Below, piece by piece: positions 4,720 to 44,369 of a stretch of DNA of 46,308 nucleotides. The notes under the pieces were generated by a model that worked only from the letters and a program-made list of their open reading frames with translations, was not told the DNA's origin and did not search any database. Location: NCBI GenBank assembly GCA_002269645.1, contig NIVC01004430.1, forward strand, positions 1 through 46,308, given 5' to 3'. Each line of letters starts with the position of its first letter. The first letter of the stretch is position 1. A program made the translations under genes and the position numbers. The DNA is from Macrostomum lignano (taxonomy: Eukaryota).

Positions 4720-5350
4720 CCCATCGCATCTAAACTGATGTCATCCAGTCTGATCAAATCTAATTTGATCCCATTTCATTCTATCCTATCTAATCCTATC
4801 CCATCTAATCGGATCCATCCAATCTGATCCCATCTAATCTGATCTTTTTCCCATCAAATCTGATCCCATCTAATCTGATCTTTTTCCCATCAAATCTGAT
4901 CCCATCTAACCCGATCCCATCTAACCTTATCCCATCTAATCTGATCCCATCTAATCTGATCCCATCTAATCTGATCCCATCTCATCTGATCCCATCCAAT
5001 CTGATATCATCTAACCCAAACCCATCTAACCCGATCCCATCTAATCTGATCCCATCTCATCTGATCCCATCTAAACCGAACCCATCTAACCCGAACCCAT
5101 CTAATCTGATCCCATCCAACCCGATCCCATCTAACCCGATCCCATCTAACCCGATCCCATCTAACCCGATCCCATCTAATCTGATCCCATCTAACCCGAT
5201 CCCATCTAATCTGATCCTATCTCATCTGATCCCATCTAAACCGAACCCATCTAACCCGATCCCATCTAATCTGATCCCATCTCATCTGATCCCATTTAAC
5301 CCGAACCCATCTAACCCGATCTCATCTAATCTGATCCCATCTAATGATCC
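4720..5350. repeat. 15-bp minisatellite (CCCATCTAATCTGAT variants) in ZNF622 intron
   Basis: Direct tandem repeats of CCCATCTAA(T/C)C(T/C)GAT. Confidence 0.95.
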
Positions 5351-5386
5351 CAATCCGCACTCAATCCCAACCCTGATGCTGCTCAC

Positions 5387-5925
5387 CCCCAGACTGCTAT
5401 AGTCGTAGAAGTCGGCAAGATCAAAGGCGTGCTCCCCGGCCAGGTTATACCGACAGTGGCCCTTGTCCAGCATGTGGCTGCGCACCGCTCGCACGCTGTC
5501 AAATCGTCTGGCCCCGTGGCACCAGAGGCACTCGCGCCCGACGCCAACTTTATAATCTAGCAGAGTGATGAGGCCCTCCAGGTCGGACAGCAGGTCCGGG
5601 TCGGGGAGAGCGAACCCGTGCTCGCGCAGCATGTGCGCGCAGTTGGCCTCCAGGCTGGCGGCCACATTCGGGCAGAACAGGCACTCCTCCTGGCCGAGTG
5701 GAGACTCGCCATCGAGTTCGCCCGAGTCTGAGTCAGAGTCGCCGTCAACGCTGAGCCAATCGGGCGAGTCGGAGCGGCCAGGCGTCTCGCGCTGCTCCAG
5801 CTGCTCGGCTTCGCGCTGCTTGTGCTTCTTCGAAGCAACGTGATTTTCGAAAGCTTTAGCGCTGGAGAATTTCTTGTGACAGGCGGAGCAGTAGGGCTGC
5901 GGATTAGCGGGCATGGGGATTGGGG
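5387..5925 (-). CDS. ZNF622: ZNF622/Rei1, middle exon with C2H2 zinc fingers
   Basis: YCSACHKKFSSAKAFENHVASKKH; ECLFC...NCAHMLREHGF; VGRECLWC...AVRSHMLDKGHC...DFYDYS. Phase-0 GTGAGC donor at 5386; ttcag acceptor at 5926-5927. Confidence 0.92.
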
Positions 5926-6936: not shown

Positions 6937-7466
6937 AATCATTTAAATGGAAGAAATGTATAGAAAGGGATTAGATAACAAAACTTAAGCTTTTCATCAA
7001 TTTTGTAATACGATCCCTCAAGGCAAAATTTGTTTGGAGGGGATTGTGTACCTAACATGCAAAAAAACACCTTGTAAAAATTTCAGCAATGGCCAATAAA
7101 AAGAAGTCTCATAGGTCGTTCTATACGATTCACATATCATATCATATATAATATGATATGATATTCATCTATTTTTTACCCCCCTCACTTTCATTATATG
7201 ATCCCCAATAGCATGAAACAATACTCTCCATACTGTAAGGGGATCATAAAACAAAAGTGAGGGGGGTGTCAGGCGGGCATCGAACAAGTTGTATGAACTA
7301 TTTTTACTTCATATATAATTAGTAGCCTACGATATCAAATTTCACTTTTGATATACGATCCCCTGCAAAAAAATTTCTAACTTAAAGGATCATATTACGA
7401 AATTGATGAAAAGCCTAAGTTTTGTTATCCGATCCCTTTCAATACACTTCCTCCATTTAAACGATT
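6937..7466. mobile_element. Degenerate fold-back/MITE-like element with 80-bp inverted arms and a central hairpin
   Basis: 6937-7016 is the reverse complement of 7387-7466 at 71/80 by hand alignment. Central inverted pair CCCCTCACTTT...GATCCCC / GGGGATC...AAAGTGAGGGG at ~7170-7264. Confidence 0.75.
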
Positions 7467-11688: not shown

Positions 11689-12860
11689 ATGGAATCCGAG
11701 CTACACCGCGCCTGCCGCCATCGCCATGAAGACACCGTGAAATCGCTGCTGAAGTCCGGAGCAGACCCGGACACTCGAGACTCATTTGGTCGGACGCCGC
11801 TGTGGGTGGCTAGTCAGCTTGGTTTCGTGGAAGTGATGACGCTACTAATAGATGCTGGGGCTCAGTTGGATTGTCCGCAGACTGATGGAGCAACTCCTCT
11901 GTTTGCAGCGGCTAAGGCAGGAGGCGACGCAGCTGTTGAGAAGCTACTGGAAGCCGGCGCTAATCCGGACCTCCGTTGTCTGGACGGGTCAGGTCCGCTG
12001 CTGATCGCGGTTCAGACAGGACACGTTGACGTTGTTCGGTGCCTGCTAGCGGCCGGAGCTGACGTCGACTTGAGGAGAAACGATCTCTCGTCGCCGCTGC
12101 TAATCTTGGCTCAATATGGACAACACAGCGTGCTAGAGATTCTGCTGCGGGCGGGACCTGATCTTCACTTGCCTAACAGAAATGGTTCGTGCCCGCTCTA
12201 CGCGGCTTGCTGGTTCGGCTACACCTCTGTCGTTGAAAGGCTGCACCTGGCTGGAGCAGAGGTGAACCACTGGAACAGCATCGGATTCACACCTCTGCAC
12301 AAGGCCGCTGAGAACGGGCATCTTGATCTGGTTCAGTTTCTAATTAAAATCGACGCCCAAGTCGATGCCCTCAGCAACACAGGTGCAGCACCGCTTCACC
12401 TGGCCGCCGAGAACGGGCACGCAAGCATAATCCAAGTTCTGCTTCAAGCCCGTGCATCGGTAAATGCACAGGATGAGGCTGGAGATTCGGCCATTCACCG
12501 TGCTGCAAGGCGGGGCCATAAAGATGCGCTCAGAGTGCTGCTGATGGCCGGGGCCGATGTGAACTTGGAAAACAATGTAGGGAACACTCCACTTACTGTG
12601 GCGGCTGGGCACTGTACTCAGCCTGAGGTATTGAGCCTGCTACTTTCCGACGCTTCTGTGAACTACATTGAAGCGGCGTTGTCGGCCTCTCTTTTCTACG
12701 GTCTCTCCGGCAACGCCCTGCAATTCTTAAGCGTCCTGCACGTTGATGCAAAGGCACTGAGACGGATTGTGCCAAAGTCGTGCATGCAACTGGCAACTAG
12801 CTGCTTGCATCGAGCCACAAAGAGAAACTCGAGTTTCAACCATTCTTCGATTTTGACAAG
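11689..12860 (+). CDS. Ankyrin-repeat exon (~10 repeats); probably the N-terminal half of an ANK-cGLR protein
   Basis: Repeated G-x-T/S-PL-H/F-x-AA...G-x-x-x-V/I-x-x-LL-x-AGA-x-V-N/D units. The ORF ends at AAG|GTATT (donor at 12861, phase 2). Confidence 0.9.
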
Positions 12861-13268
12861 GTATTAAAAAGGACACGGTCCTCTGGAATAGTAAGAGGGT
12901 ATAATTTAGTTATAGCTTGAGTAATTCGTAGTAAGAATTTGAATAAGTATGAATGAGTAGTGAGTATTTGAACAGGGGTCGGCAAGAGTAGCTCACTCTC
13001 GATTCTTGCGCCAGACCCACTGGTTGATTCCGTGCAATATTTATTTGGGGCTTGTGTGCACAACAATTGGCGGGAGGTTGGCGTGCAACTCACATCCATC
13101 CATGAGGGCCAAACCCAAGGCCAAGGCGTGTGTACGACTGTGTGTTTGCGTACAGTATTCGCGTGCTTGTATGTGCTCAAAGCAGAATGGGCAGCGGACG
13201 CTGCCCGGTGTTCCATGGTGCTCACAACCCAAATTACTATTACATACGAGTTATTTCAATCATTATAG

Positions 13269-15168
13269 AGCCAAAATTTCGGATGATCATCAGTTTAGTC
13301 AACTGCTATTTGAGTCTCTTTGCTGCTCGGGCTTTACAAGAGACGGCTCCGTCACTCAACAGGCGCAGGCAGATGTTCTACAACAAATAGTTCGGAAATT
13401 AAAGCCCAATACCTGTATAAATGTAGTTGGCAGCTACAGCGAGGGTTGGGGAAGCTCTCTAACAAGTCTGGACGGTGGCATTGACGAAGATTCCGACATA
13501 GACTATACGGAGATTCTGCCAGTTGAGCTGCATCTTGTTGGCTACTGCCAGTGCCCGGCGCCTGATTCCGAGAAACTATTGACGTACGAAGGCGGCTACG
13601 CTCGGTTTCGGGCTGCTAGTAAGCTCATCCACAATCAGCTTTTTTATCGTATAATGTCCTGTTTATCCTGTACTGTTGTACCCAGACGTTTTAAAAAGCA
13701 ATTACATTTCATATTCTGGCAATTTCTCTGTCTTTCAGCTGCGAACCCCAGCAATCCTCAGTTGCGAACGCTGCAATCGCCAGCTATGGATTACGTGAAT
13801 TCAGTGAGGGCTTGTTGCTATCCAGACATAGACGTGCTGACACCTGGTCGAGCCACTCACATTCCAAAGGACATGCTTGAAGCGCTACGAAACGAAGTAC
13901 TTCAAGCCAAGGCCCGTCAAGCATCACCGGCTCATTCTGTTCATAAGCCTGCGTCCCCGTGCCACCTGGTCAGAGCGGCGCCTCCGGACAGAGAGGGTGA
14001 ATGGCTGAGACTCAGCACAACATTTTTGGAGAGGCTGATGATTCGCGGCTTCAGCACGCTGCAGGGTCAACTATTCGTTATACTGAAGTTTATCATCAAG
14101 CGACACCTGTCCAAGACAGTGAGCGGGCTCAAGACTTACGTCGCGAAGACTTTAATGTTTCGCATGATACACGAGAGTCCAGCTGAGGAATGGCACCCAT
14201 CAAATCTGCTGCAACTGATCAAGAAGGCTTTGGGAATTCTGCTCGCTGGTCTGCAGCAGGGGGGAGAGCACGAGTGTCTGCCGCACTTCTTTGCGCCCCA
14301 AGCCGCCGTCTACTTGCGCAAAGGCCACTCGACAAAGCAAGACATATATAAGGCGATAGTTAGCACAACAAACAATCTTCGCCAACCATTGATAACGCTC
14401 ATGGACCAGCTGGTACCTACGAGTCACTCGGACTACCATCAGTTTCACCCATTCACATTGATACCTGTAACCTACGAACTGCAATCGGATTTTAAGATAA
14501 CCAGCTTTCTGGATCTTTATCCAGCGGCTTGGACTCTGCTGCGAGGTTTAGCAAGCGACTCGCATATATCGATGTCGCTTATCAACAGCATACCAGACTT
14601 TGCATTCGCTATGCGAGAAAGTTTTCGAGCGATGGCCCAACTGAAGAATGACAAGCGTGAAGATGCCTTGCACACGCTGAGATTGGCGCTTCACCACAGG
14701 GTCAGCCGAACTGTTGTCAAGAGACAAAAAGAGGCCACTGTGTCGGGCGTTTTTGAGTATTTGGAAAAGAAATTTGTCGCAGTGGATGCAAGCTACAGGT
14801 TCTGCTTTCGTTTCGATAAACGACCCGAGCTGAGTTTTCTCCCAGCTTTGGCTCGAATAAACTTTCCGCAGAAAATGCTTTTTTATGGCAACAGGTTCTT
14901 CATGAACTTTGACACCCTGCTCAAGTGGCTCAGCCTGGAACTCATCCCCAACCAAGCTCAAGGCGAGTCGCAGCGCTGGTTTGAAGAACTGCTGCACGAC
15001 CAGCACATTGACGCTCTCGACTTGGCGATGGCCTTGCAGTTCTGCTCAGACGGTAACATTCTGGCCGCTATTATTCAACGAGAGCGCAGTGTCATCGCTG
15101 CTTTGCCGTCGCTGCGACAGGGCTTGGAGGATTGCAAGCGCCGATTGGTGAGTCACCGAAGCTTCTGA
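13269..15168 (+). CDS. Mab-21/cGAS-like (cGLR) nucleotidyltransferase with helical C-terminal extension; exons 13269-13618 and 13739-15168
   Basis: Pol-beta NTase motif VVGSYSEG...DSDID, third acid in AMDYV. Mab-21 core WLRLSTTFLE...LFVILKFIIK...LKTYVAKTLMF...EEWHPSNLL...CLPHFFAP. Phase-2 acceptor tatag at 13267-13268; internal GTAAGC...TTTCAG intron 13619-13738. Confidence 0.85.
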
Positions 15169-18304: not shown

Positions 18305-19275
18305 ACGTCACTCATTAATGACACAGCGTCACTCATTAATTACACAGCGTCACTTATTAATGACACAGCGTCACTCATTAATGACACAGCGTCACTCATT
18401 AATGACACAGCGTCACTTCTCATTGATGACACAGCATCACACATTGATGACACAGCGTCACTCATTAATGACACAGCGTCACTCATTAATGACACAGCGT
18501 CACTCATTATGACATAGCGTCACTCATTAATGACACAGCGTCACTCATTAATGACACAGCGTCACTCATTAATGACACAGCGTCACTCATTATGACACAG
18601 CGTCACTCATTAATGACACAGCGTCACTCATTAATGACACAGCGTCACTCATTATGACACAGCGTCACTCATTAATGACACAGCGTCACTCATTAATGAC
18701 ACAGCGTCACTTCTCATTGATGACACAGCATCACTCATTAATGACACAGCGTCACTCATTAATGACACAGCGTCACTCATTAATGACACAGCGTCACTCA
18801 TTAATGACACAGCGTCACTCATTATGACACAGCGTCACTCATTAATGACACAGCGTCACTCATTAATGACGTCACTCATTAATGACACAGCGTCACTCAT
18901 TAATGATACAGCATCACTCATTAATGATACAGCATCACTCATTAATGACACAGCGTCACTCATTATGACATAGCGTCACTCATTAATGACACAGCGTCAC
19001 TCATTAATGATACAGCATCACTCATTAATGACACAGCGTCACTCATTAATGATACAGCGTCACTCATTAATGACACAGCGTCACTCATTAATGACACAGC
19101 GTCACTCATTAATGACACAGCGTCACTCATTAATGACACAGCGTCACTCATTAATGGCACCGCGTCACTCATTGATGACACATCATCACTCACTAATGAC
19201 ACCGCGTCACTCATTATGACATAGCGTTACTCATTAATGATACCGCGTCACTCATTGATGACACATCATCACTTA
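18305..19275. repeat. 21-bp minisatellite
   Basis: Tandem unit GACACAGCGTCACTCATTAAT with occasional 20/23-bp variants. Confidence 0.97.
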
Positions 19276-20750: not shown

Positions 20751-22199
20751 TCAATATTCAATAGTGAACCTTGGCGGCTTTCGTTCGGAGTCCAGCAGCG
20801 GCTCGCATGGCCGAATGGCGACCAACTCGATGTGGTCCGGCCTGATGGACTGCCGCTCCAGACGGTCCAGGCCGCCGGCCGCCGTGCGCACTGACGGAAG
20901 GCGGCTCTGTCTGCTTAGCCGCCTGTCGGCGTACACTGGATTGGTGCCACCCAGAACTGCTGGGCCGCCGGACAGGCAGCCAAGCGTCTGGCGAAGCTCC
21001 TGACGAAATCGTTGAGCGGAGGCAACGTAAAGAAAGAAATTAGCCACGTGGCTCAGGTACATAATCATCTCGGCGATAGCTTCGATCAGATAGAAGTTCG
21101 CTATGCTGGCCATGTCTCTCGATCGAGTCAAATCGAATAGGAAAATTGACAGTTTCAGCAGAGCGATGGGCAGAGTGCAGAGCAGGTAGCAGGCGCAAAT
21201 TGTGCTCAGCATCACAGTCACCTGGCGGGCCGATCGGCTGCGCGGCGGCTGATTCGCCTGGTGATTGTTGCGCCAGCCGCTGAGGCAGCGCGGACGCAGC
21301 AGTCTGATCACCATGGCAGCGTTCAGCAGCAGAATAATGCCAAACGGCGTCAACAGGTAGCAGACGGTGTCTAGCCAGTAGACAGTGTAGTCAATGCCAA
21401 GCGAGGGACGCAGGTCGCAGTCGTTGTAGGCGTACTCACGAATCTCTGGGAGCAAGGAACCGTTAGAATCGTCCGCAGCAGCTCTGTGCGTGTAGTTGAT
21501 TAGCTTTGGCTGCAGCGCCACGGTCCACATCCAGTGCGAGTTGAGCACCAGGTCGGCGAGGCAGATGACCAACGCCGTGGCTCGAATCCTCATACCGCTG
21601 TCGGTGCTCGTGCTGGCTCGCAACGGAAATACGACGGCGTAGAAGCGCTCAATTGTCATGGCAACAATTAACCACACGGACGCGTAACTAAAGGAGAACT
21701 GCAAGTAGGAAGTGAGCTTGCAGCCAAACTCGCTGATTGTTTCTATTCGAATGCCGAACATCTCCTTGAGCCACTTCCAGAGCAGAGCGGTGGAAAGAAC
21801 TAACTGGTCGGTGATGGCAATGAGGATGAGGTACAGGTACACCGGGACAGTCTTGGAGTGCCGCCGCAGCACCGCCAGGCCCAGCAGGTTTCCAACGGTG
21901 CCCACCGTCAGCAGGACTGGCGGGACGGCGCACTTCACCAGCTTGCTCAGTCTGTAGGCCCTGTAACGGTCGTACATGGCCTTCTCGTAGGGAAAAATGT
22001 GCATCTCGCCGTTTTTTGCCGGGCTATAGGCGACCAAAGTGATTGACAGAGCGGCCGAACTCTGTGTGCAGCTGGAGACGGATAGAAGTATGCTGGATTC
22101 TTGTGGGGGGGGGGGGAATCGAAGGCAACTCGCTATTGAGCTATTCGCCCCGATCCTCTGTGCCTCATCGCTTGGATGAAGCTCAGCAGCCAATGGCAT
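20751..22199 (-). CDS. Intronless class A (rhodopsin-like) GPCR, neuropeptide/FMRFamide-receptor-like; true start may be the Met at 22004
   Basis: Seven hydrophobic segments: TM1 GTVGNLL, TM2 IAITDQLVL, CKLTSY, TM3 MTIERFYAVVFPL, TM6 YLLCTLP, TM7 ANFFLY followed by FRQEL. Confidence 0.92.
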   Translation of the reverse strand: MPLAAELHPSDEAQRIGANSSIASCLRFPPPPQESSILLSVSSCTQSSAALSITLVAYSPAKNGEMHIFPYEKAMYDRYRAYRLSKLVKCAVPPVLLTVGTVGNLLGLAVLRRHSKTVPVYLYLILIAITDQLVLSTALLWKWLKEMFGIRIETISEFGCKLTSYLQFSFSYASVWLIVAMTIERFYAVVFPLRASTSTDSGMRIRATALVICLADLVLNSHWMWTVALQPKLINYTHRAAADDSNGSLLPEIREYAYNDCDLRPSLGIDYTVYWLDTVCYLLTPFGIILLLNAAMVIRLLRPRCLSGWRNNHQANQPPRSRSARQVTVMLSTICACYLLCTLPIALLKLSIFLFDLTRSRDMASIANFYLIEAIAEMIMYLSHVANFFLYVASAQRFRQELRQTLGCLSGGPAVLGGTNPVYADRRLSRQSRLPSVRTAAGGLDRLERQSIRPDHIELVAIRPCEPLLDSERKPPRFTIEY

Positions 22200-30210: not shown

Positions 30211-30261
30211 GTAGGTTTGCATAGGTGTGATAAAATACTTGTTTTCAGGTTTTTGTCTACT

Positions 30262-30940
30262 GGGGAATTGAAGATATTATCTAATGAAGAATTGGGATAT
30301 TATCTACTGAGGAATTGGGATATTATCTACTGAGGAATTGGGATATTATCTACTGGGGAATTGAAGATATTATCTAATGAAGAATTGGGATATTATCTAC
30401 TGAGGAATTGGGGATATTATCTACTGAGGAATTGGGATATTATCTACTGAGGAATTGGGATATTATCTACTGAGGAATTGGGGATATTATCTACTGAGGA
30501 ATTGGGATATTATCTACTGAGGAATTGGGATATTATCTACTGAGGAATTGGGATATTATCTACTGAGGAATTGGGATATTATCTAATGAAGGAATTGGGA
30601 TATTATCTACTGAGGAATTGGGATATTATCTACTGAGGAATTGGGGATATTATCTACTGAGGAATTGGGGAGGAATATTATCTACTGAGGAATTGGGATA
30701 TTATCTACTGAGGAATTGGGATATTATCTACTGAGGAATTGGGATATTATCTACTGAGGAATTGGGATATTATCTACTGAGGAATTGGGGATATTATCTA
30801 CTGAGGAATTGGGGATATTATCTACTGAGGAATTGGGGGTATTATCTACTGAGGAATTGGGATATTATCTACTGAGGAATTGGGGGTATATTATCTACTG
30901 AGGAATTGGGATATTATCTACTGAGGAATTGGGATATGCT
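30262..30940. repeat. 23-bp minisatellite (in REPS-like intron)
   Basis: Tandem unit TGAGGAATTGGGATATTATCTAC. Confidence 0.97.
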
Positions 30941-31086: not shown

Positions 31087-32418
31087 GTCGCCGGCGCCGC
31101 CACGCCTGGAGACGCCAGGGCGGCCAGTCTGGACCGCTCGGCGCTACCGCCGCCGCAGCCGAAGCCAAAACCGAAGCCCAAACTGAAGCCGGGCTCCTCT
31201 AGCGCCGACGCCGACGAAGCACCTAGAGTTGTCGACGCTGCCGAGGCCGGCGGCGGAGTCCGGCGCCACTCGGACGAAGACGCCGATCCCGGGGCCGGCG
31301 GCGGCGGCACTGACCAGTCTGGGCGCGGCAGCGGCGGCGGCTGGGCCCACTTCTCGGACGTCGACTCGGACACTGGCCTCATCAGCGGCTCGGCCGCTGG
31401 CCGCGAGCCTTTGGCCGGCTCGACCGCTGCCGCAGCATCCACTGGCGGCCGCGGCGCCTCTCGCCGACGTCATCGTCGGGCCGCCTCGTCGTCCTCGGCA
31501 GAAGGCGGCGTCGGGGGATCCAAAAACGACGACGGCGACGATGTCGATGATGACGATTCGACGTCGGATTCGGACGACTCCGACAGCCAGGCTGGCGACG
31601 CGCCCGACGACCGGCACAAGTACGTTGAGGGCAACGGCGGCGGCGCTGGCGGCTTCGAGGATGAAGAGGACAGCTCGGATCCGCTGGCCATGACCCGCGA
31701 GCAGCGCGAGTACTACGCCAACCAATTCCTCACCCTGTGCCCCAGCCTCACCGGCCGCATCACCGGCCCAGTGGCCAAGCAGTTCTTTGAGAAGTCCCGC
31801 CTGCCCCCGCCCGAGCTGTCCCGCATCTGGGCCCTGTCCGATCGCGACATGGACGGCCAGCTCAACCTGGCCGAGTTCTCCACCGCGATGCACCTGGTCG
31901 TGCTGAGGCGCAACAATGTGCCGATACCCGACAGGCTGCCCCCTGTTGCTGCCGGCTACGAGCCGCTGTCCGACCAGGACGAGGCTTCGCCGCCTCCGAC
32001 GATGCCGCCGCCACCGCCAATTCACCAGCAGCAGCCGCCGCCGGAGCCGTCAGTCTTTGGCGGAATTCCTCCAACCGGTGTTGGCGTGCTTCATCCGACC
32101 CCTAGGAAACCGACAGCGCATCAGCAGCAGCATCTCCTGCAACAGCACGCCGACCCGTCCGCTCCGACTGTGCCGCCACGAGCTGCCAGCTATCAGCTGG
32201 CGTCCTCCGCTGCTGCCGCCGCCGCTGCTGCCGACGCCGCCGCTGTTGCCTCCGGCCAGCCGCCCAATCGGGAACGCCTGCTAGCGGCGGTGAAGGCTCA
32301 GAAAGAGAAGAATCACACCCTGGTTAGGCTCAACAATGAACTGGCTGTCGAGCTCAAGGAGGTCACCGAGCAAAGGATTGCCTTGGAATTGGAGTTGGAA
32401 CGGCTGAAACCGCTTTAA
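31087..32418 (+). CDS. REPS1: RalBP1-associated EH-domain protein (REPS1/REPS2-POB1-like), terminal exon
   Basis: cctaag acceptor; frame open from 31087. EH domain DPLAMTREQREYYANQF...AKQFFEKSRLP...IWALSDRDMDGQLNLAEFSTAMHLVV and C-terminal coiled coil KEKNHTLVRLNNELAVELKEVTEQRIALELELERLKPL, both matching REPS family motifs. Confidence 0.9.
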   Translation, partial: VAGAATPGDARAASLDRSALPPPQPKPKPKPKLKPGSSSADADEAPRVVDAAEAGGGVRRHSDEDADPGAGGGGTDQSGRGSGGGWAHFSDVDSDTGLISGSAAGREPLAGSTAAAASTGGRGASRRRHRRAASSSSAEGGVGGSKNDDGDDVDDDDSTSDSDDSDSQAGDAPDDRHKYVEGNGGGAGGFEDEEDSSDPLAMTREQREYYANQFLTLCPSLTGRITGPVAKQFFEKSRLPPPELSRIWALSDRDMDGQLNLAEFSTAMHLVVLRRNNVPIPDRLPPVAAGYEPLSDQDEASPPPTMPPPPPIHQQQPPPEPSVFGGIPPTGVGVLHPTPRKPTAHQQQHLLQQHADPSAPTVPPRAASYQLASSAAAAAAAADAAAVASGQPPNRERLLAAVKAQKEKNHTLVRLNNELAVELKEVTEQRIALELELERLKPL

Positions 32419-32599: not shown

Positions 32600-33327
32600 C
32601 TACGGTTGGAATTCTGCTCGATTTCTGCTTTGAATTCTGCTTGATTTCCGGTTGGAATTCTGCTTGATTTCCGGTTGGAATTCTGCTTGGGTTTCCGGTT
32701 GGAATTCTACTTGATTTTCGGTTGGAATTCAACTTGATTTCGGTTGGAAGTCTGCTTGGGTTTCCGGTTGGAATTCTACTTGATTTCCGGTTGAAATTAT
32801 GCTTTGATTTCCGGTTGGAATTCAACTTGATTTCCGGTTGAAATTATGCTTTGATTTCCGGTTGGAATTCAACTTGATTTCCGGTTGGAATTCAACTTGA
32901 TTTCCGGTTGGAATTCAACTTGATTTCCGGTTGGAATTCAACTTGATTTCCGGTTGGAATTCAACTTACTTGATTTCCGGTTGGAAGTCTGCTTGATTTC
33001 CGGTTGGAAGTCTGCTTGATTTCCGGTTGGAATTCTGCTTTAATTTCCGGTTGGAAGTCTGCTTTGATTTCCGGTTGGAAGTCTGCTTGATTTCCGGTTG
33101 GAAGTCTGCTTTGATTTCCGGTTGGAATTCTGCTTTGATTTCCGGTTGGAATTCTGCTTTAATTTCCGGTTGGAATTCTGCTTTGATTTCCGGTTGGAAT
33201 TCTGCTTTGATTTCCGGTTGGAATTCTGCTTGATTTCCGGTTGGAATTCTGCTTTGATTTCCGGTTGGAATTCTGCTTTGATTTCCGGTTGGAATTCTGC
33301 TTTGATTTCCGGTTGGAATTCTGCTTT
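32600..33327. repeat. 23/24-bp minisatellite with internal mini-palindrome
   Basis: Unit GATTTCCGGTTGGAATTC(TGCTTT/AACTT). Confidence 0.95.
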
Positions 33328-33977
33328 ATTGATTCATTGTCTTGCTGCTAATAATAGATTTTGAAAAATATTTGCATCTGTAGCGGTAAACTCTGACTGT
33401 ATCTGTCTGATTTATCTGGTCTAGTTAATCATAAAAGTACAAGCTGTCTTTTTAGATCCGAATGAAAATCGTGCTCTTGGTATTCACCGTGTGCACGTGG
33501 CCATATGGCCATGCTTTAGTCAGATTTTAATCCATCCCTTGTCTTCAAACTTGCAATGCCAGTCTGTAAATTATTATTTATATTATCTTGTTGAATAAAT
33601 GCGTTCACCTAATCAGCTAATTAATCTCACTTGAGTTGTTTTATTTATTGAGTTTTTTGAACTGATAAATATTTTGTCATCAATTGTACTGACTGTACCT
33701 CACACCTGATCTCACGTTGTTAATTTGAAGGCCTATTTTATTTTGATATCCGTTGATTGTTGCATTAATTACCCTGTCATCAAGTTATAAGTGTTATTGC
33801 TGCAACCAGCCACCTGTAGCTGTCTTGCAAACAATTCAGCGCATTGCCTTCAATATATAATTTGTCTTTTGTCTGCTTTTGCACCCCAGTGCGCAGTTCT
33901 CCATGACTAATTGTGGGCAGTGCGCTGGCACGTTAATTTGTAGAATCAATTTGGGGTCTCGTGAGTTTTATGCCATT

Positions 33978-34100
33978 CTAATAGTACTGTATAGGGAATT
34001 ATTAATAGTACTGTATAGGGAATTATTAATAGTACTGTATAGGGAATTATTAATAGTACTGTATAGGGAATTATTAATAGTACTGTATAGGGAATTATTA
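33978..34100. repeat. 24-bp tandem repeat (~5 copies)
   Basis: Unit AATTATTAATAGTACTGTATAGGG. Confidence 0.93.
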
Positions 34101-35149: not shown

Positions 35150-35942
35150 ACATCCCAAGACAGCAAGCATCCCCCAGCTGATAGCAAGCATGCCGCAGAT
35201 AACAAGTATCTCCCAGATAGCAAGCACCGCCCTCCAAGAGTAAGCAACCGCATATCATCCCCTGATAACAAGCACCCCCCCAGATAGCAAGCATCCCCTG
35301 ATAGCAAGCATTCCCAAGATAGCAAGCATTCCCCAGATAGCAAGCATCCCTGATAACAAGCACCCCCCCCCCCAGATAGCAAGCATTCCCCAGATAGCAA
35401 GCATCCCCCAGATAGCAAGCATCCCCTGATAGCAAGCATCCCCTGATAGCAAGCATTCCCAAGATAGCAAGCATTCCCCAGATAGCAAGCATCCCTGATA
35501 ACAAGCACCCCCCCCCCAGATAGCAAGCATTCCCCAGATAGCAAGCATCCCGCAGATAACAAGTATCTCCCAGATAGCAAGCACCGCCCTCCAAGAGTAA
35601 GCAACCGCATATCATCCCCTGATAACAAGCATCCCCCAGATAGCAAGCATCCCCCAGATAGCATCCCCCAGATAGCAAGCATCCCCTGATAACAAGCATC
35701 CCCCAGATAGCAAGCATCCCCCAGATAGCATCCCCCAGATAGCAAGCATCCCCTGATAACAAGCATCCCCAGACAGCAAGCATCCCCCAGACAGCAAGCA
35801 TCCCCCAGATAGCAAGCATCCCCTGATAGCAAGCATCCCCCCTGATAGCAAGCATCCCCCAGATAGCTAGCATCCCCCAGATAGCATCCCCCAGATAGCA
35901 AGCATCCCCCAGATAGCAAGCATCCCCCAGATAGCAAGCATC
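35150..35942. repeat. ~18-bp minisatellite, left part of the array split by the pPolB element
   Basis: Unit GATAGCAAGCATCCCCCA, with a ~357-bp higher-order duplication (cagataacaagtatctcc at ~35196 and ~35553). Confidence 0.93.
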
Positions 35943-36675
35943 ACTACGTAATGCGCAGATAGAGCAGGGTTTTCAGGCAGATTTGACGCAAAAAACGCAA
36001 ATTATACTACTATCTGAAAATGAAGTAAGTAGTATACAAAAACGCTATCCTAAGCGTGATGTGGCAATATGTAGTTGTAATAATCCATGTGCTCATATTA
36101 ATACCATGTACATTAATCCCTATCTATCTCAAATTGTACATTAATTCCATGTACATTAATCCCTATCCCAAATTGTCTATCCCCAATTCTATATGTACAT
36201 GTGCATTAATCTACAGTGTCATCCCCAGCGCGCGCGCACCAACATTACATGTACAATGCTACATGTACACAGAGGCGAGAATTACTAATCTCATCTACTA
36301 CCAAATGAGTCAACTAACCGTGTAGCGTACATCATGTATAAGTATTTACAATGAAGATATATTTACATTTAATCAGTAGCATATTACAGGAAATAATTTA
36401 TGTACAGCATTACCAGCAAATAGAATATACAGAAAATTTTACATTGTTTTTCATTAATTTTCTTTTCATAAATAATTTTAAACAAGTTTGACACGCAAAA
36501 TATGTACAATAGATTTTTACATTGGCAATTTCGCTGCATACAATACAAAAATGCTTTATGTACATTTGTATAGTAGTATGTAACTCTTCATTAATTTAAC
36601 ATGCAAAATATGTACAACAATAAATAGATTTTACTCAGTCAAATTTAACAAGATATTTATTAAGCAAGGGCCACA

Positions 36676-39511
36676 TTATTTATAACCATAAGGCCTGCTG
36701 CAGGCCCCGTACACGCGCTTCGTCAGGACGCGCTGAAACGTCTTGTCCATATTGATTGTGTGTATGGTACAAGACGCCTTGTCGCGCCTAAACTGAAGCT
36801 GCGGCAGCTGCAGGGAGCCGCCGTGTAGTAGGGCACTGCGCAATTCATCGCTGCGCTCCCGAATCTCCGGAGTCAGGCGGATGCCCTTGCACTTCAGGAC
36901 CTGACTCCGGGCACCGGCCGCATCCTCGACAATGTAAGTGTAGAGTTTGGGCCCCCCACTTACAAAGTCGGTCATCCGGCTGCCTGCGGGCACCTCATCG
37001 GTCCACATTCCGAGGCTCGTGCCATGGGGCGGCTCCCATTGGCCCTCGGAATGCCGGTAAACGACCCTGTGTGGGAGAGAAAACGAGATAATTGCTAACT
37101 ATTTACATGTAATCAATTCTAAAATAATTTTCCCAATGCAATACTTACGAGTCAGTGTCGCAGTAAATGGCCCGTTCGCCGAGCCCCTCCAATGCCTCAT
37201 ACAGGCGCAGCCGGGCCTGAGTGGTCGTAAAGACCCCGATTGGCACATTGGAGTACCGGAACGGCCGCTGATTAAAATAGCGGTGCCGGTACTCTAGCAG
37301 CATAAACTCGCTGCCAATCGGTTCGCAGGCCTTGACTTTGAGGTTGGGGTCGGTCAGCCGGGCGAGCCAGTCCTCGTAGCTGGATACAATTTCTGTCGAT
37401 GTCAGGTCATCACGCTGACAAAATTTGCCCCAGAGCCTGTGTGTTGTGAAAAGAAGTGCTACTGTTAGTAGAAGAAGAAAATCATTTAAAATACAAAAAT
37501 TTATGAATACTTACGAATTCAAAAAGATTTTCGCTACAAAGCGAAGTCCTGGGTTGGGCTCGACCTTGTCCAGCGTGACGCCCTCCTTGGCGTAAAAATC
37601 GGCAATGTAGGCGGCCTTGTCTTCATCCGACATGCCGGGGGAACCGCTCGACTCAGCCTTCAGCTTGAGAAAGGTGCTGACATAGTCACTGAACAGACCG
37701 GTCCGCTTCTCTGTCCAGTAGGCCAGCGCGTGCACCGCCTGCAGCCGGTAGCCCAACTGGAAGGCCTTCCGCAGCTCCGGCGTTGCCCAGGTACCAGTCA
37801 GTGCCCGCTGCTGGTCAGAGTGGTCGCAGCACTCGCCGCACTGCTGCTCCATACAGGTGCGGCAAAGCCCAAAAAAGAGCTTCTTTTGCACCCTGTAGGG
37901 CAGCAGCGGAATGTGCAAATCTGACGGCGGCAGCACTGTCACCTTGGCAATGCCAAAGTAGCTAGCCAGCGCGTCAGAATCGAGCACTTGCGGCGTCGGA
38001 TGTTGCACCGGGTGGCCAATCGGGTATGGGTCTTTCGACTGCACCGTCGGGTACAGAGAGACCTGCCAGTTGAAATAAAGCATTATTTTTTTTTCATAAA
38101 CTGTATTTTTTGCAAAATATTCTACTATATTAGTAGTATCGCTACTCACCACATCCCGATATTTGAGAGTCTCAGTCTCGCTGGCCACAGCATGCGGGAT
38201 AAAGCACTCTACGCGGCCACCGTAGAGCGCATCCTCCATCTTGAGCGGAGCGCGCAGATGTGCAGTTGCGGCGATAAAGTCGGCCTGCGACGCCAATACA
38301 GTGTCGTACTCATGCTCCCAAATGACTCGAACACTGTAATTGTGCCGCTCCAACTCGCGAGTGAACCACTCAGTCTCGTGGCGAATATGGCTCAGAGGCT
38401 GCCGTTTGAGCGGGTGGACGACATCCTGATCGGGCATACACTGCTCGCAGCCATGGTAGAAACAGCCATGAAACTGCAAAACAGTGTTGCTCGCCTCATC
38501 GAAGCCGTCCACCTTGCGGCCGAGAATGACAGCCTCGCCGCCAGTCGAGTCGCAGGTTCGCAGCCGCCCGCCAAATTCGGTGGCATTCAAATAGGCCAGC
38601 CACTTGCGCGCCTTGAACGACTGCTGGTCGGCCTGCCGGGCAATCACGCCGACCGAGTTGGGCTCCATAAACCGGGTGGTGAAAACGGCCATTGCCAAAC
38701 TGGCAATCGTATTGGCCTGAACAAATGGTTCCAGGCCGTCGCAAATTTCACCAATTATTGCCCTGTACTTGATGCAGCCCTCGCGAAGCAGGACTGTGTC
38801 GCTCAAACAATAATCGAGATATTCCCGATTAAAGTTGAACAACTCGCCCTGTCGCGAGGCTAGCCAAGCACAGATTGAGTCATAGTCCTTGTTCGCTTTG
38901 CCGCCATAATATTCAATAGCCGGGTAGGGGCCAACGTAGTTCCAATTAGCCGGCTTGTTAAACTCGTGGGGAAAGGTCCCCTTGGCCAGCTTTGTGTTAG
39001 CGAGCCCCAGAGCTTTGGGGAATTGCGCAAGCGGGATTGGTATAAAATTTAATGAATCTTTAAATACCAATTTATCCACCGTCATGCTCATTAGCCGGCT
39101 GCCCTGGAACAGTACTTGTGGCCGCTTCTTGGCCAGGCCGTTGAGTAGAGCGCCAAGCAGTAGGAACGAATCGTAGCCTGATGCATTGTGCGCTACAACA
39201 ATGGCGCCGCCTCGGAAAGCTGTGCTCAGCCAGGTGAAAAACGCATTCAGCGAGGCCGGGCCCACAGCCACAAAATCGGCCATTTGGCAGGCGCAGTCTG
39301 AGTGGCTGACGCAATTGGAGAATTCCTCCCCCAGATCGCGGCCAGTCAGACAATTGGCGGCGCTATGCAGGCCATTGCAGAGGCGGCAAGTCTCGCGCGG
39401 AAACGCCCGGCCGGAGCAGGTCTCGCAGCACGTGACGGCAGTCACCAGGTGCACGTGATGCTGCTTCTCCTCGTCCGTGTATGTTTCCGTATCGTAGAAC
39501 ACGTACGGCAT
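36676..39511 (-). CDS. Protein-primed family B DNA polymerase (Polinton type), 4 exons: 39511-38150, 38062-37515, 37436-37149, 37066-36676 (862 aa from the Met at 39511)
   Basis: ExoI FYDTET, ExoII HNASGYD, ExoIII YCLSD, Vsr-like insert (KVDGFD...QFHGCFYHGC...VIWEHE). After splicing: DV|VSLYP, KIFLNS|LWGKF, YCDTDS|VVY, GGPKLY, KCKGI, C-terminal RPYGYK*. Exon sum 2589 nt is divisible by 3. Confidence 0.93.
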
Positions 39512-39603
39512 AGTCGAAGCTTTCACTTTGGGAGCCTTGACGGAGCACAAATGCGGGCATGTCAAGTGCCCACTGTGTAAACAGTACGACGAGGCCGGCT
39601 CGC

Positions 39604-41170
39604 AGATGGAGGATGCGCTCTACGGTGGCCGCGTAGAGTGCTTTATCCCGCATGCTGTGGCCAGCGAGACTGAGACTCTCAAATATCGGGATGTGGTGAG
39701 TAGCGATACTACTAATATAGTAGAATATTTTGCAAAAAATACAGTTTATGAAAAAAAAATAATGCTTTATTTCAACTGGCAGGTCTCTCTGTACCCGACG
39801 GTGCAGTCGAAAGACCCATACCCGATTGGCCACCCGGTGCAACATCCGACGCCGCAAGTGCTCGATTCTGACGCGCTGGCTAGCTACTTTGGCATTGCCA
39901 AGGTGACAGTGCTGCCGCCGTCAGATTTGCACATTCCGCTGCTGCCCTACAGGGTGCAAAAGAAGCTCTTTTTTGGGCTTTGCCGCACCTGTATGGAGCA
40001 GCAGTGCGGCGAGTGCTGCGACCACTCTGACCAGCAGCGGGCACTGACTGGTACCTGGGCAACGCCGGAGCTGCGGAAGGCCTTCCAGTTGGGCTACCGG
40101 CTGCAGGCGGTGCACGCGCTGGCCTACTGGACAGAGAAGCGGACCGGTCTGTTCAGTGACTATGTCAGCACCTTTCTCAAGCTGAAGGCTGAGTCGAGCG
40201 GTTCCCCCGGCATGTCGGATGAAGACAAGGCCGCCTACATTGCCGATTTTTACGCCAAGGAGGGCGTCACGCTGGACAAGGTCGAGCCCAACCCAGGACT
40301 TCGCTTTGTAGCGAAAATCTTTTTGAATTCGTAAGTATTCATAAATTTTTGTATTTTAAATGATTTTCTTCTTCTACTAACAGTAGCACTTCTTTTCACA
40401 ACACACAGGCTCTGGGGCAAATTTTGTCAGCGTGATGACCTGACATCGACAGAAATTGTATCCAGCTACGAGGACTGGCTCGCCCGGCTGACCGACCCCA
40501 ACCTCAAAGTCAAGGCCTGCGAACCGATTGGCAGCGAGTTTATGCTGCTAGAGTACCGGCACCGCTATTTTAATCAGCGGCCGTTCCGGTACTCCAATGT
40601 GCCAATCGGGGTCTTTACGACCACTCAGGCCCGGCTGCGCCTGTATGAGGCATTGGAGGGGCTCGGCGAACGGGCCATTTACTGCGACACTGACTCGTAA
40701 GTATTGCATTGGGAAAATTATTTTAGAATTGATTACATGTAAATAGTTAGCAATTATCTCGTTTTCTCTCCCACACAGGGTCGTTTACCGGCATTCCGAG
40801 GGCCAATGGGAGCCGCCCCATGGCACGAGCCTCGGAATGTGGACCGATGAGGTGCCCGCAGGCAGCCGGATGACCGACTTTGTAAGTGGGGGGGCCCAAA
40901 CTCTACACTTACATTGTCGAGGATGCGGCCGGTGCCCGGAGTCAGGTCCTGAAGTGCAAGGGCATCCGCCTGACTCCGGAGATTCGGGAGCGCAGCGATG
41001 AATTGCGCAGTGCCCTACTACACGGCGGCTCCCTGCAGCTGCCGCAGCTTCAGTTTAGGCGCGACAAGGCGTCTTGTACCATACACACAATCAATATGGA
41101 CAAGACGTTTCAGCGCGTCCTGACGAAGCGCGTGTACGGGGCCTGCAGCAGGCCTTATGGTTATAAATAA
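39604..41170 (+). pseudogene. Inverted duplicate of the pPolB C-terminal half (same three introns; extra G at ~40888-40894 breaks the frame)
   Basis: MEDALYGGRVE...RPYGYK* identical to the left copy where translations are given. G7 here versus C6 at 36952-36957. Confidence 0.88.
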
Positions 41171-41903
41171 TGTGGCCCTTGCTTAATAAATATCTTGTTA
41201 AATTTGACTGAGTAAAATCTATTTATTGTTGTACATATTTTGCATGTTAAATTAATGAAGAGTTACATACTACTATACAAATGTACATAAAGCATTTTTG
41301 TATTGTATGCAGCGAAATTGCCAATGTAAAAATCTATTGTACATATTTTGCGTGTCAAACTTGTTTAAAATTATTTATGAAAAGAAAATTAATGAAAAAC
41401 AATGTAAAATTTTCTGTATATTCTATTTGCTGGTAATGCTGTACATAAATTATTTCCTGTAATATGCTACTGATTAAATGTAAATATATCTTCATTGTAA
41501 ATACTTATACATGATGTACGCTACACGGTTAGTTGACTCATTTGGTAGTAGATGAGATTAGTAATTCTCGCCTCTGTGTACATGTAGCATTGTACATGTA
41601 ATGTTGGTGCGCGCGCGCTGGGGATGACACTGTAGATTAATGCACATGTACATATAGAATTGGGGATAGACAATTTGGGATAGGGATTAATGTACATGGA
41701 ATTAATGTACAATTTGAGATAGATAGGGATTAATGTACATGGTATTAATATGAGCACATGGATTATTACAACTACATATTGCCACATCACGCTTAGGATA
41801 GCGTTTTTGTATACTACTTACTTCATTTTCAGATAGTAGTATAATTTGCGTTTTTTGCGTCAAATCTGCCTGAAAACCCTGCTCTATCTGCGCATTACGT
41901 AGT

Positions 41904-42210
41904 AGCATCCCCCCAGATAGCATCCCCAGATAACAAGCATCCCCAGATAGCAAGCATCCCCCCAGATAGCATCCCCCAGATAGCAAGCATCCCCTGATAA
42001 CAAGCATCCCCCAGACAGCAAGCATCCCCCAGACAGCAAGCATCCCCCAGATAGCAAGCATCCCCTGATAGCAAGCATCCCCCAGACAGCAAGCATCCCC
42101 CAGACAGCAAGCATCCCCCAGATAGCAAGCATCCCCTGATAGCAAGCATCCCGGCCCCTGATAGCAAGCATCCCCCCTGATAGCAAGCATCCCCCCAGAT
42201 AGCAAGCATC
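41904..42210. repeat. ~18-bp minisatellite, right part of the split array
   Basis: Same GATAGCAAGCATCCCCCA unit and same orientation as 35150-35942. Confidence 0.93.
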
Positions 42211-43009: not shown

Positions 43010-43335
43010 TTCCCTTTCCATATAAACTATCAGAGGGTGTCCTTAAAGGGGCCGTTTTACATGTACTCTTCCTATACATGTGCAAACTATAATGCTAGCT
43101 TATTGATGACGCTATTTGTTTGCATTAATCTAATCTAACTTATTTTGTTACACAAAGAAACAACCATCTCATACATCCCTTCCCATATAAACTATCAGAG
43201 GGTGCCCTTAAAGGGGCCGTTTTACATGTACTCTTCCTATACATGTGCAAACCATAATGCTAGCTTATTGATGACACTATTTGTTTGCATTAATCTAATC
43301 TAACTTATTTTGTTACACAAAGAAACAATCATCTC
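43010..43335. repeat. 165-bp tandem duplication, each unit with a degenerate histone-type stem-loop on the minus strand
   Basis: CATATAAACTATCAGAGGG at 43019 and 43184. Reverse complement reads AAAACGGCCCCTTTAAGG(A/G)CACC. Confidence 0.85.

Positions 43336-43959: not shown

Positions 43960-44369
<410 letters not shown>

What the first reader, a model, noticed from the sequence alone, without database searches (positions are those of the whole stretch)
35943..41903. Integrated giant-palindrome 'polymerase-only' Polinton: a candidate copy-back defective genome
Seen: two inverted arms of 2299 and 2300 bp that appear identical except for one G in a homopolymer. Each arm holds the same element terminus and the 3' half of a pPolB gene. 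The 1.36-kb spacer completes the left copy with exonuclease and Vsr-like domains. A 6-bp TSD (AGCATC) flanks the element, and the flanking minisatellite has the same orientation on both sides. No integrase, ATPase, protease or capsid ORF is visible. Known: Polintons/Mavericks encode pPolB plus a retroviral-like integrase and make 6-bp TSDs; viral replicases can generate copy-back/snap-back defective genomes. Inference: the parent element was copied from one end, folded back and regenerated the same end twice. The product has two functional termini and was integrated in trans, like a defective-interfering Polinton that still carries an intact 862-aa polymerase core.
Basis: partly seen in the sequence, partly recalled or inferred. 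Interest (0 to 1): 0.9.

Follow-up and report, generated by a model that had tools for sequence, protein, structure and literature searches.

The report
Palindromic defective Polinton in a flatworm
A 6-kb insertion in a flatworm genome is a gutted copy of a virus-like Polinton transposon made of one end of the element duplicated back-to-back, apparently created when DNA synthesis folded back at a 12-13-base hairpin site inside the polymerase gene; it is a rare sequence fossil of how these elements may copy themselves.

Summary
There are two inverted arms, 35943-38241 and 39604-41903, identical except for one 1-nt homopolymer length difference. A 1362-bp spacer lies between them. A 6-bp duplication (AGCATC) flanks the whole, inside an 18-bp minisatellite that runs the same way on both sides. 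The only gene is a protein-primed family B polymerase (PF03175) with three GT-AG introns and an 862-aa reading frame. It is 99-100% identical to Macrostomum lignano proteins.

First, the polymerase is not intact. Relatives carry about 440 further N-terminal residues, a conserved domain with zinc-finger-like clusters, and these are absent here. Second, the spacer is not a simple loop. The strand switch sits at a 12-13-nt sequence that reads EHKC on one strand and HLC on the other. Relatives have both motifs 16 residues apart, so the parental gene holds a short inverted repeat. The loop between them survives. One arm then lost about 1.36 kb next to the centre.

Best reading: a fold-back (copy-back) defective Polinton derivative, probably formed on a linear extrachromosomal copy and integrated in trans. 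Rearrangement after integration is not excluded. No reads or host genome were available. It is a new variant of a known kind, of moderate-to-high interest.

The parts
35937..35942 (.). Left copy of the 6-bp target-site duplication (AGCATC)
35943..38241 (.). Left arm of the palindrome. It holds the element terminus, 733 bp of AT-rich non-coding sequence, and the 3' part of the polymerase gene.
35943..36675 (.). Terminal non-coding part (mirrored at 41171-41903). TGTACA occurs 10 times here. An AATAAA follows the polymerase stop codon.
   Evidence: shuffle mean 0.24, maximum 3
36676..39511 (-). Left polymerase copy, from the first ATG to the stop. Exons are 39511-38150, 38062-37515, 37436-37149 and 37066-36676, giving 862 aa. 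It has one defect: a 5' truncation. The conserved N-terminal domain of about 440 aa and the upstream region are absent. There are no stops or frameshifts.
   Evidence: for the missing N-terminal part
38242..38652 (-). Vsr-like (PD-(D/E)xK) endonuclease domain inserted between the exonuclease and polymerase domains. It is a feature of the whole family.
38242..39603 (.). Spacer. It is the part of the left polymerase copy that has no partner in the right arm, plus the fold-back point and the loop piece.
39543..39555 (.). Fold-back point, a 12-13-nt sequence. It reads E-H-K-C on the + strand and H-L-C-S on the - strand.
   Evidence: Relatives have both motifs in one reading direction, 16 residues apart.
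39556..39601 (+). Loop piece. It is the polymerase-sense sequence that lies between the two half-sites in relatives, kept once and contiguous with the right arm.
39543..41170 (+). Right partial polymerase copy. It is broken three times: a 5' truncation, one internal deletion of about 1.36 kb, and one 1-nt frameshift.
39604..41903 (.). Right arm of the palindrome
41904..41909 (.). Right copy of the 6-bp target-site duplication (AGCATC)
35154..35942 (.). Host 18-bp minisatellite, left of the insertion. The array continues at 41919-42210 in the same orientation.

Best explanation
This is a real, non-autonomous, palindromic derivative of a recently active Polinton (Maverick) family of Macrostomum lignano.

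How it formed, as inferred:
1. A copy of the element was reduced to its polymerase-proximal end and duplicated back-to-back by a fold-back at a 12-13-nt inverted repeat that lies naturally inside the polymerase gene. Two routes give the same duplex. Either the growing strand snapped back or switched to the displaced strand during protein-primed strand-displacement synthesis, or a broken end folded into a hairpin cap that was then copied round.
2. The first product would be a palindrome with arms of about 3.66 kb, a loop of about 45-47 nt, and the same terminus at both ends, created by run-off.
3. About 1.36 kb was then lost from one arm, starting at the base of the loop. This could be a second template jump, or processing of an unstable palindrome centre. 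It left arms of 2.3 kb and a 1.36-kb spacer.
4. Most likely steps 1-3 happened on an extrachromosomal linear copy. The 6-kb molecule, with two valid termini, was then inserted by an integrase supplied by an autonomous relative, which made the 6-bp duplication.

Shown: the anatomy, the junction sequences, the duplication and the family membership of the gene. Inferred: the order of events, the extrachromosomal stage and the integration in trans.

The element has no evident function of its own. Its only reading frame is a 5'-truncated polymerase.
For: - Arms are identical, the terminus is present twice, and the flanks run in direct orientation with a 6-bp duplication.
- The + strand at 39543-39605 encodes EHKCGHVKCPLCKQYDEAGS fused to the arm. 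The - strand over the same 12-13 nt encodes HLCSVKAPKVKAST and continues into the polymerase.
- Three M. lignano relatives carry the whole stretch in one direction (...EHKCGH[I/V]KCPLCKQYDEAGSHLCFVKAPKV...). Five carry the EAGS|HLC junction. None carries the fused form.
- The amino acids alone force complementarity at 8 of the 12 positions of the repeat (reasoning from the codon table).
- The family is young and multi-copy. There is 1 mismatch in 454 aligned residues and 0 in 263 against P0001, a UniRef100 entry with 3 members, and there are many other M. lignano paralogues.
- Two complete relatives have terminal repeats of only 265-304 bp that exclude the polymerase. Published range: 100-1500 bp terminal repeats, 13-25 kb length, 5-8-bp duplications (PMC10748475).
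- A protein-primed family B polymerase is known to make exactly this kind of product. In phi29 amplification, more than 85% of chimeras are inverted sequences with intervening deletions, joined at 2-21 nt of complementarity (PMC1855051).
- A break next to a short inverted repeat is a known route to a hairpin-capped end and then a large palindrome (PMC3315005).
Against: - There is one locus only.
- No reads, no host genome and no parental DNA could be examined, so the short inverted repeat in the parent is inferred from proteins.
- Two events are needed, not one.
- The duplication would also survive a rearrangement after integration.
- In the two complete but distant relatives (about 40% identity) the polymerase is not next to a terminus. 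The gene order of the true parent is therefore unknown.
- No further copy of the fused junction appears among the 258 collected proteins. This is weak evidence, because gene models need not include it.
Confidence: 0.55

Rival explanations
1. Rearrangement in place. A full-length Polinton integrated here and made the duplication. Later a break or a stalled fork inside it was repaired by copying inward from the opposite terminal repeat, and the new strand re-annealed at the short inverted repeat. A one-sided deletion followed.
For: The duplication and flanks fit this equally well. Host pathways that build palindromes from short inverted repeats near breaks are well known (PMC3315005). The end product is the same duplex as in the main explanation.
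Against: It needs strand invasion between short inverted terminal repeats, clean loss of all other genes, and an end exactly at the native terminus. Run-off on a linear molecule explains the second terminus more simply. There is no remnant of any other Polinton gene in the element or the window; for example, the N-terminal 408 residues of P0001 find nothing.
Confidence: 0.25
2. Assembly artefact: a fold-back chimeric long read, or a mis-join, created the palindrome.
For: The arms are 100% identical. The only difference is a homopolymer length, which is a typical long-read error. No read data were available.
Against: A missed-adapter fold-back would also invert the flank and would have no spacer. 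Here the flanks run in direct orientation with a 6-bp duplication that restores a normal repeat unit. The internal junction sits at a biologically meaningful short inverted repeat, with the loop retained. No other such palindrome occurs in the window.
Confidence: 0.08
3. Ordinary family architecture: members normally have terminal repeats of about 2.3 kb that include half of the polymerase gene.
For: Terminal repeat length varies widely among Polintons (PMC10748475).
Against: The right copy is a rearranged gene, with the loop piece fused to the arm and about 1.36 kb missing. Relatives keep the parental order. Complete relatives have 265-304-bp repeats without the polymerase. The element is 6 kb with no other gene.
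Confidence: 0.03
4. Two independent truncated copies inserted head to head.
For: None specific.
Against: There is one pair of duplications only. No host sequence or second duplication lies at the inner junction. The arms are identical. The inner junction lies at a self-complementary site of the gene.
Confidence: 0.02

Closest known systems
Autonomous Polintons / Mavericks (polintoviruses)
   Same: It carries a protein-primed family B polymerase of the same family as polymerases that sit beside an rve integrase and an A32-type ATPase. It has a 6-bp target duplication and terminal inverted repeats.
   Different: It is 6 kb rather than 13-25 kb. It has no integrase, ATPase, protease or capsid genes. 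Its arms are 2.3 kb and contain coding sequence. Its polymerase lacks the conserved N-terminal domain.
Copy-back / snap-back defective viral genomes, including the adenovirus incomplete-particle genomes with large inverted repetitions. The adenovirus case is my own recollection: Daniell 1976 is listed as reference 143 in PMC12090768, but the paper itself was not held.
   Same: One genome end is present twice in inverted orientation. The internal genes are lost. The junction is a fold-back.
   Different: Here the product is integrated in a host chromosome with a target duplication. A second, one-sided deletion has made the palindrome asymmetric. No evidence of packaging or interference exists.
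phi29 polymerase chimeras in multiple displacement amplification (PMC1855051)
   Same: The enzyme is of the same class. The products are inverted sequences with intervening deletions, primed at 2-21 nt of complementarity on a displaced strand. This matches the 12-13-nt switch plus the deletion seen here.
   Different: Those are in vitro artefacts on random templates. This is a natural element bounded by its own termini.
Large palindromes nucleated by short inverted repeats next to a break (mechanism and references in PMC3315005)
   Same: A short inverted repeat with a small loop defines the centre of a kilobase-scale palindrome. Long palindrome centres are unstable and are trimmed asymmetrically (the centre-break mechanism, cited in that paper).
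   Different: Those cases concern chromosomes. Here the unit is a mobile element with defined ends.
Mu killer of maize (PMC3440606)
   Same: [quoted passage not shown] That is the same architecture.
   Different: Mu killer derives from a cut-and-paste transposon and is known to make a hairpin RNA that silences MuDR. No expression or small-RNA data exist for this locus.
Hairpin and palindromic deletion derivatives of the yeast linear killer plasmid pGKL1 (own recollection; not found in the library)
   Same: The replicon is protein-primed. The derivative keeps one end and is duplicated around a hairpin.
   Different: Those are cytoplasmic plasmids and are not integrated. The comparison could not be checked here.

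Membership tests
Polinton / Maverick (autonomous) | [quoted passage not shown] | tested here: met
   PF03175 at E = 2.7e-28 for the ORF and 2.6e-41 for the spliced product. The family profile hits phi29 polymerase 1XHX. The gene is 5'-truncated.
Polinton / Maverick (autonomous) | Encodes a retroviral-like (rve) integrase | tested here: not met
   No such ORF lies in 35943-41903. It is present next to the polymerase in relatives L002 and L004.
Polinton / Maverick (autonomous) | Virion module (capsid proteins, A32-type ATPase, protease) | tested here: not met
   No further coding capacity lies in the element. An A32 ATPase is present in relatives.
Polinton / Maverick (autonomous) | Target-site duplication of 5-8 bp, usually 6 bp | tested here: met
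   AGCATC lies on both sides. The empty-site reading matches an existing repeat unit, and the reading without a duplication never occurs. The published range is from PMC10748475.
Polinton / Maverick (autonomous) | Length of 13-25 kb with terminal inverted repeats of 100-1500 bp | tested here: not met
   The element is 5961 bp with 2.3-kb arms. The length of the native terminal repeat within the arm is unknown.
Copy-back / snap-back defective genome | The same genome end is present twice, inverted, and the internal genes are lost | tested here: met
Copy-back / snap-back defective genome | The junction shows a strand switch or fold-back at short complementarity | tested here: met
   A 12-13-nt self-partner site with the loop retained. 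The parental DNA itself was not seen.
Copy-back / snap-back defective genome | Arises and is propagated during replication of the parent, and interferes with it | not testable with these tools
   No reads, no host genome, and no copy-number or expression data
Mu killer-like hairpin-RNA silencer locus | Partial inverted duplication of the element's gene plus two copies of one terminal repeat | tested here: met
   The architecture is as described for Mu killer in PMC3440606.
Mu killer-like hairpin-RNA silencer locus | Read-through transcript, derived small RNAs, and silencing of the family | not testable with these tools
   No transcript or small-RNA data
Long-read fold-back assembly artefact | The palindrome includes inverted flanks, has no spacer, and has no target duplication | tested here: not met
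   The flanks run in direct orientation with a 6-bp duplication, and there is a 1362-bp spacer.

The most novel reading that the evidence does not exclude
The locus works like maize Mu killer, but for a virus-like element. The truncated polymerase has lost its own upstream region, so any transcript that reaches it must start in or beyond the right arm. Such a transcript would carry both arms and fold into a perfect hairpin RNA of about 2.3 kb. That hairpin could feed small-RNA silencing of the active Polinton family. The insertion would then be a host-beneficial 'Polinton killer'.
Probability: 0.1. Interest if true: 0.85.

Novelty: new variant of a known kind. Interest (0 to 1): 0.6.

Why it matters
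Polintons are assumed to replicate by protein-primed synthesis on an extrachromosomal linear copy and then to be inserted by their integrase. As far as I know, this has been inferred mainly from gene content. A derivative has three informative properties here. Its second terminus is best explained by run-off synthesis. Its centre is a fold-back at a short hairpin site. The whole is bounded by a fresh 6-bp duplication. Together these are sequence-level evidence for that replication stage, and they suggest that termini alone suffice for integration in trans.

It would also extend copy-back defective genomes to this class of elements. Such genomes are well known for RNA viruses and, from my own recollection, for adenovirus. 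My two literature searches on this turned up no description of a palindromic Polinton derivative.

The inverted duplication of the polymerase gene is also the architecture that silences MuDR in maize, so it may matter for host control of the family.

The finding rests on one locus in one assembly, so its weight depends on read-level and genome-wide confirmation.

Tried and rejected
Searches that led nowhere:
- The search for homologous proteins with the 684-aa ORF timed out twice. The representative search and a shorter query replaced it.
- Exact look-ups of the window ORF and of P0001 found no contig. All M. lignano relatives are UniRef-only. The host genome, and so the parental DNA, other copies and empty alleles, could not be examined.
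- The search for related loci failed with a family alignment and found no relative with the single protein in metagenome contigs.
- Single-sequence Pfam and PDB searches of the Vsr-like segment gave nothing significant. Only the 26-sequence profile worked.
- The N-terminal domain of P0001 has no Pfam or PDB hit as a single sequence. The family profile shows only zinc-finger-like matches there. Its role, for example as a terminal-protein-like primer, stays an inference by analogy with linear plasmids.
- The adenovirus paper (Daniell 1976) and the pGKL hairpin-plasmid paper were not available.

Models rejected:
- A single copy-back with a 1.36-kb loop. The loop piece lies in sense orientation next to the right arm, which needs a second event.
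- Normal long terminal repeats.
- Two head-to-head insertions.
- A missed-adapter artefact.
The reasons for the last three are given under the rival explanations.

Step left out: I did not write out the inferred parental sequence at the junction.


Full report
1. THE OBSERVATION

The window has no ambiguous bases. A repeat search and a global alignment show two inverted arms, 35943-38241 (2299 nt) and 39604-41903 (2300 nt). They have no mismatch and one 1-nt length difference in a homopolymer run. The spacer between them is 1362 nt, at 38242-39603. The complementarity stops exactly at both outer and both inner ends. The terminal 27-mer occurs only at the two ends, against 0 expected by chance. 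No comparable inverted repeat exists elsewhere in the window.

The insertion sits in an 18-bp minisatellite that has the same orientation on both sides. AGCATC abuts both ends. The string expected if there were no duplication never occurs in either array. The flank-to-flank string with one AGCATC removed is a unit variant that occurs twice in the right array. So the 6-bp target-site duplication is supported, and an inverted-flank artefact is not.

2. THE GENE

The minus-strand ORF 37511-39565 is a protein-primed family B polymerase (PF03175, E = 2.7e-28). Downstream of its stop, the frame resumes twice after short AT-rich segments with GTAAGT...ACACAG ends. These splits fall inside polymerase motif B (KIFLNS|LWGK) and just after motif C (YCDTDS|VVY). 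A third in-frame segment of 87 nt (GTGAGT...TGGCAG) interrupts motif A (DVV|SLYP).

Joining the four exons as they stand gives exactly 862 aa. The exons are 39511-38150, 38062-37515, 37436-37149 and 37066-36676. Exon GC is 57%, against 26-30% in the introns. PF03175 then scores E = 2.6e-41 over profile positions 11-193 and 209-461 of 468. An AATAAA follows the stop codon.

A 137-aa segment between the exonuclease and polymerase domains is Vsr-like. It gives no hit as a single sequence. A profile of 26 family members hits the Vsr endonuclease structures 1ODG, 1VSR and 1CW0 (E about 5e-5). Individual members hit the Pfam families Vsr, RAP, MTES_1575 and DUF559. Of 258 collected family proteins, 94 cover most of this segment, so it is a feature of the family.

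3. THE HOST AND THE FAMILY

Other ORFs in the window are a rhodopsin-type receptor, an ankyrin-repeat protein, a Mab-21-like protein, an EH-domain protein and a histone. The host is therefore an animal.

A full HMMER scan found 7888 relatives of the polymerase. The best are UniRef proteins of the flatworm Macrostomum lignano. The spliced product differs from P0001 (A0A1I8FZS5, a UniRef100 entry with three members) at 1 of 454 aligned residues and at 0 of a further 263. The window therefore very probably comes from M. lignano, and the family is young and multi-copy.

More distant relatives (about 40% identity) on long contigs sit in bona fide Polintons. L002 has the polymerase, an A32-type ATPase (E = 1.9e-5), an rve integrase (E = 2.3e-9) and terminal repeats of about 265 bp that are 17 kb apart. 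L004 has the polymerase, rve and A32. L005 has 304-bp terminal repeats that are 13.5 kb apart. In none of these does the terminal repeat include the polymerase. The published ranges are 13-25 kb in length, 100-1500-bp terminal repeats and 5-8-bp duplications (PMC10748475).

4. THE POLYMERASE IS TRUNCATED

The first Met of the 862-aa frame corresponds to residue 456 of P0001. Homology to P0001 starts only 15 codons upstream of that Met. P0001 residues 1-408 find nothing anywhere in the window.

Residues of about 118-436 of P0001 are conserved in 78 of the 258 collected proteins, including distant ones. In the listed relatives of 1200-1800 aa that align from near the query's start, some 400-970 residues precede the region that aligns with the window ORF. 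The family profile gives zinc-finger-like matches in that region. The "intact polymerase core" is therefore correct for the exonuclease, Vsr-like and polymerase domains. The gene as a whole is broken once, by a 5' truncation that removes a conserved domain and the native upstream region.

The right-arm copy is broken three times: a 5' truncation, one internal deletion and one 1-nt frameshift.

5. THE CENTRAL JUNCTION

This is the main new result.
- On the + strand, just left of the right arm, the sequence encodes ...EHKCGHVKCPLCKQYDEAGS fused to the first residues of the arm (MEDALYGG...).
- On the - strand, the polymerase copy begins ...HLCSVKAPKVKAST-MPYVF....
- In the relatives P0001, P0002 and P0009 these two pieces are contiguous and in the same direction...EHKCGH[I/V]KCPLCKQYDEAGSHLCFVKAPKVKASTMPYVF.... 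Five relatives carry the EAGS|HLC junction. Three carry the Y|Z junction (PLK|MEDAL). None carries the fused form.
- At the nucleotide level, the 12-13 nt at 39543-39555 read E-H-K-C on the + strand and H-L-C-S on the - strand.

The parental gene must therefore contain two copies of this short sequence in inverted orientation, about 45-47 nt apart. The window keeps one of them, which serves as both. The amino acids alone force complementarity at 8 of 12 positions.

Written with T for the terminus, Z for the arm part of the gene, Y for the spacer part, a/a' for the short repeat, L for the loop, and a prime for a reverse complement, the + strand reads T' Z' Y' a L Z T. A fold-back at a/a' gives T' Z' Y' a L a' Y Z T. 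The observed structure is that palindrome minus a' and Y in the arm that is contiguous with L. The deletion starts at the base of the loop and shows about 1 nt of microhomology. So the 1.36-kb spacer is not the loop of a single copy-back. There were two events: a fold-back and a one-sided deletion next to the centre.

6. MECHANISM

Three routes give the same duplex:
(i) The nascent strand copies through a', L and a, folds on itself and self-primes.
(ii) The nascent 3' end switches to the displaced strand at the complementary site.
(iii) A broken linear copy is resected, folds at a/a' into a hairpin-capped end and is copied round.

Routes (i) and (ii) are documented for a protein-primed family B enzyme. 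In phi29 amplification, more than 85% of chimeras are inverted sequences with intervening deletions, primed at 2-21 nt of complementarity on displaced strands (PMC1855051). Route (iii) is the established route to large palindromes from short inverted repeats (PMC3315005 and the references in it). That paper also cites the centre-break trimming of long palindromes, which would account for the one-sided deletion.

On a linear molecule, synthesis runs off at the terminus. This explains why the second end is an exact copy of the first. The 6-bp duplication then records an integrase-type insertion. Since the element has no integrase, that step must have been supplied in trans, if the order of events is as proposed.

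The alternative is that a full-length copy integrated first and was rearranged in place. The duplication cannot exclude this. It requires copying inward from the opposite terminal repeat, and it leaves no trace of the lost genes.

My estimates are 0.55 for formation before integration, 0.25 for rearrangement in place, 0.08 for an artefact, and the remainder for minor models.

7. WHAT IT DOES

Nothing suggests a function of its own. It is a non-autonomous derivative with two termini. The 733-bp terminal non-coding part carries the palindromic hexamer TGTACA ten times, against a shuffle mean of 0.24 and a maximum of 3. These could be binding sites. Whether the element competes with its parent (interference) cannot be assessed.

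One consequence follows from the anatomy. The truncated gene has only about 90 nt of unique sequence upstream, so a transcript that includes it must start in or beyond the right arm. It would then contain both arms, that is, a perfect hairpin of about 2.3 kb. The same architecture in maize Mu killer yields a hairpin RNA that silences MuDR (PMC3440606). This is the most novel reading that the evidence does not exclude. I give it a probability of about 0.1.

8. NOVELTY AND VERDICT

Each component is known: Polintons, non-autonomous derivatives, copy-back genomes, and palindromes nucleated by short inverted repeats. My two literature searches on this turned up no description of a palindromic, polymerase-end Polinton derivative. 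I classify it as a new variant of a known kind.

The copy-back idea gains specific junction evidence. However, the polymerase is truncated, the spacer needs a second event, and both trans-integration and interference remain unproven.

Limits: there is one locus in one assembly, and no reads, host genome or parental DNA could be reached. Interest is 0.6.

Noticed in passing
window 38242-38652 (-); alignment A1: A Vsr-like PD-(D/E)xK endonuclease domain is inserted between the exonuclease and polymerase domains of this whole protein-primed polymerase family. It is present in 94 of 258 collected proteins. Invariant residues include the D-G and G-C..H....C positions. What a nuclease does inside a replicative polymerase is unexplained.
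   Followed up: partly
window 38063-38149, 37437-37514, 37067-37148 (-): The polymerase gene of this virus-like element has three short spliceosomal introns (87, 78 and 82 nt; GC 26-30% against 57% in the exons). Each splits or abuts a catalytic motif (A, B, C). The second contains a TACTAAC-like branch site.
   Followed up: partly
window 35943-36675 and its mirror 41171-41903: The palindromic hexamer TGTACA occurs 10 times in the 733-bp terminal non-coding part (shuffle mean 0.24, maximum 3), often within CCATGTACATTAAT-like repeats. These are candidate subterminal binding sites.
   Followed up: partly
P0001 residues about 118-436 (absent from the window): The family has a conserved N-terminal domain, found in 78 of 258 proteins, with a DKRCLIRA-type motif and several Cys-rich clusters that give zinc-finger-like profile matches. 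It has no Pfam family, and its function is unknown.
   Followed up: partly
window 44064-44369 (+): There is a histone H3-type ORF (PF00125, E = 1e-45) about 2 kb to the right of the insertion. In a straight translation, the part upstream of residue ~20 (the PRKQL motif) contains a stop and does not read as histone. It may be an intron, a pseudogene or an assembly error.
   Followed up: partly
whole window, e.g. 514-868, 1678-2081, 4723-5352, 18306-19273, 30256-30937, 32603-33330, 33979-34100, 43011-43335: The window is unusually rich in unrelated minisatellites with units of 12-165 bp and up to 46 copies. GC content swings from 26% to 68% per kb.
   Followed up: no
window 6937-7042 and 7361-7466: A 106-nt inverted repeat pair (82% complementary, 318 nt apart) lies in an AT-rich stretch. 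It may be a small non-autonomous transposon.
   Followed up: no
window 11689-12867, 13006-15168, 20751-22199, 31411-32418, 5282-5914: There are long uninterrupted host ORFs: an ankyrin-repeat protein, a Mab-21/cGAS-like protein (only the HhH domain is detected), a rhodopsin-type receptor, an EH-domain protein and a C2H2 zinc-finger protein.
   Followed up: partly
L003 637-3010 and 7359-10651: A relative's contig carries two polymerase-bearing stretches in the same orientation about 6.7 kb apart, with no inverted repeat of 100 nt or more. This could be a tandem or nested arrangement of related elements.
   Followed up: no
P0003 (UniRef A0A1I8JAK4): A M. lignano gene model fuses a Polinton polymerase with Cys-rich extracellular-type sequence at both ends. 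It is probably a chimeric prediction across an insertion.
   Followed up: no
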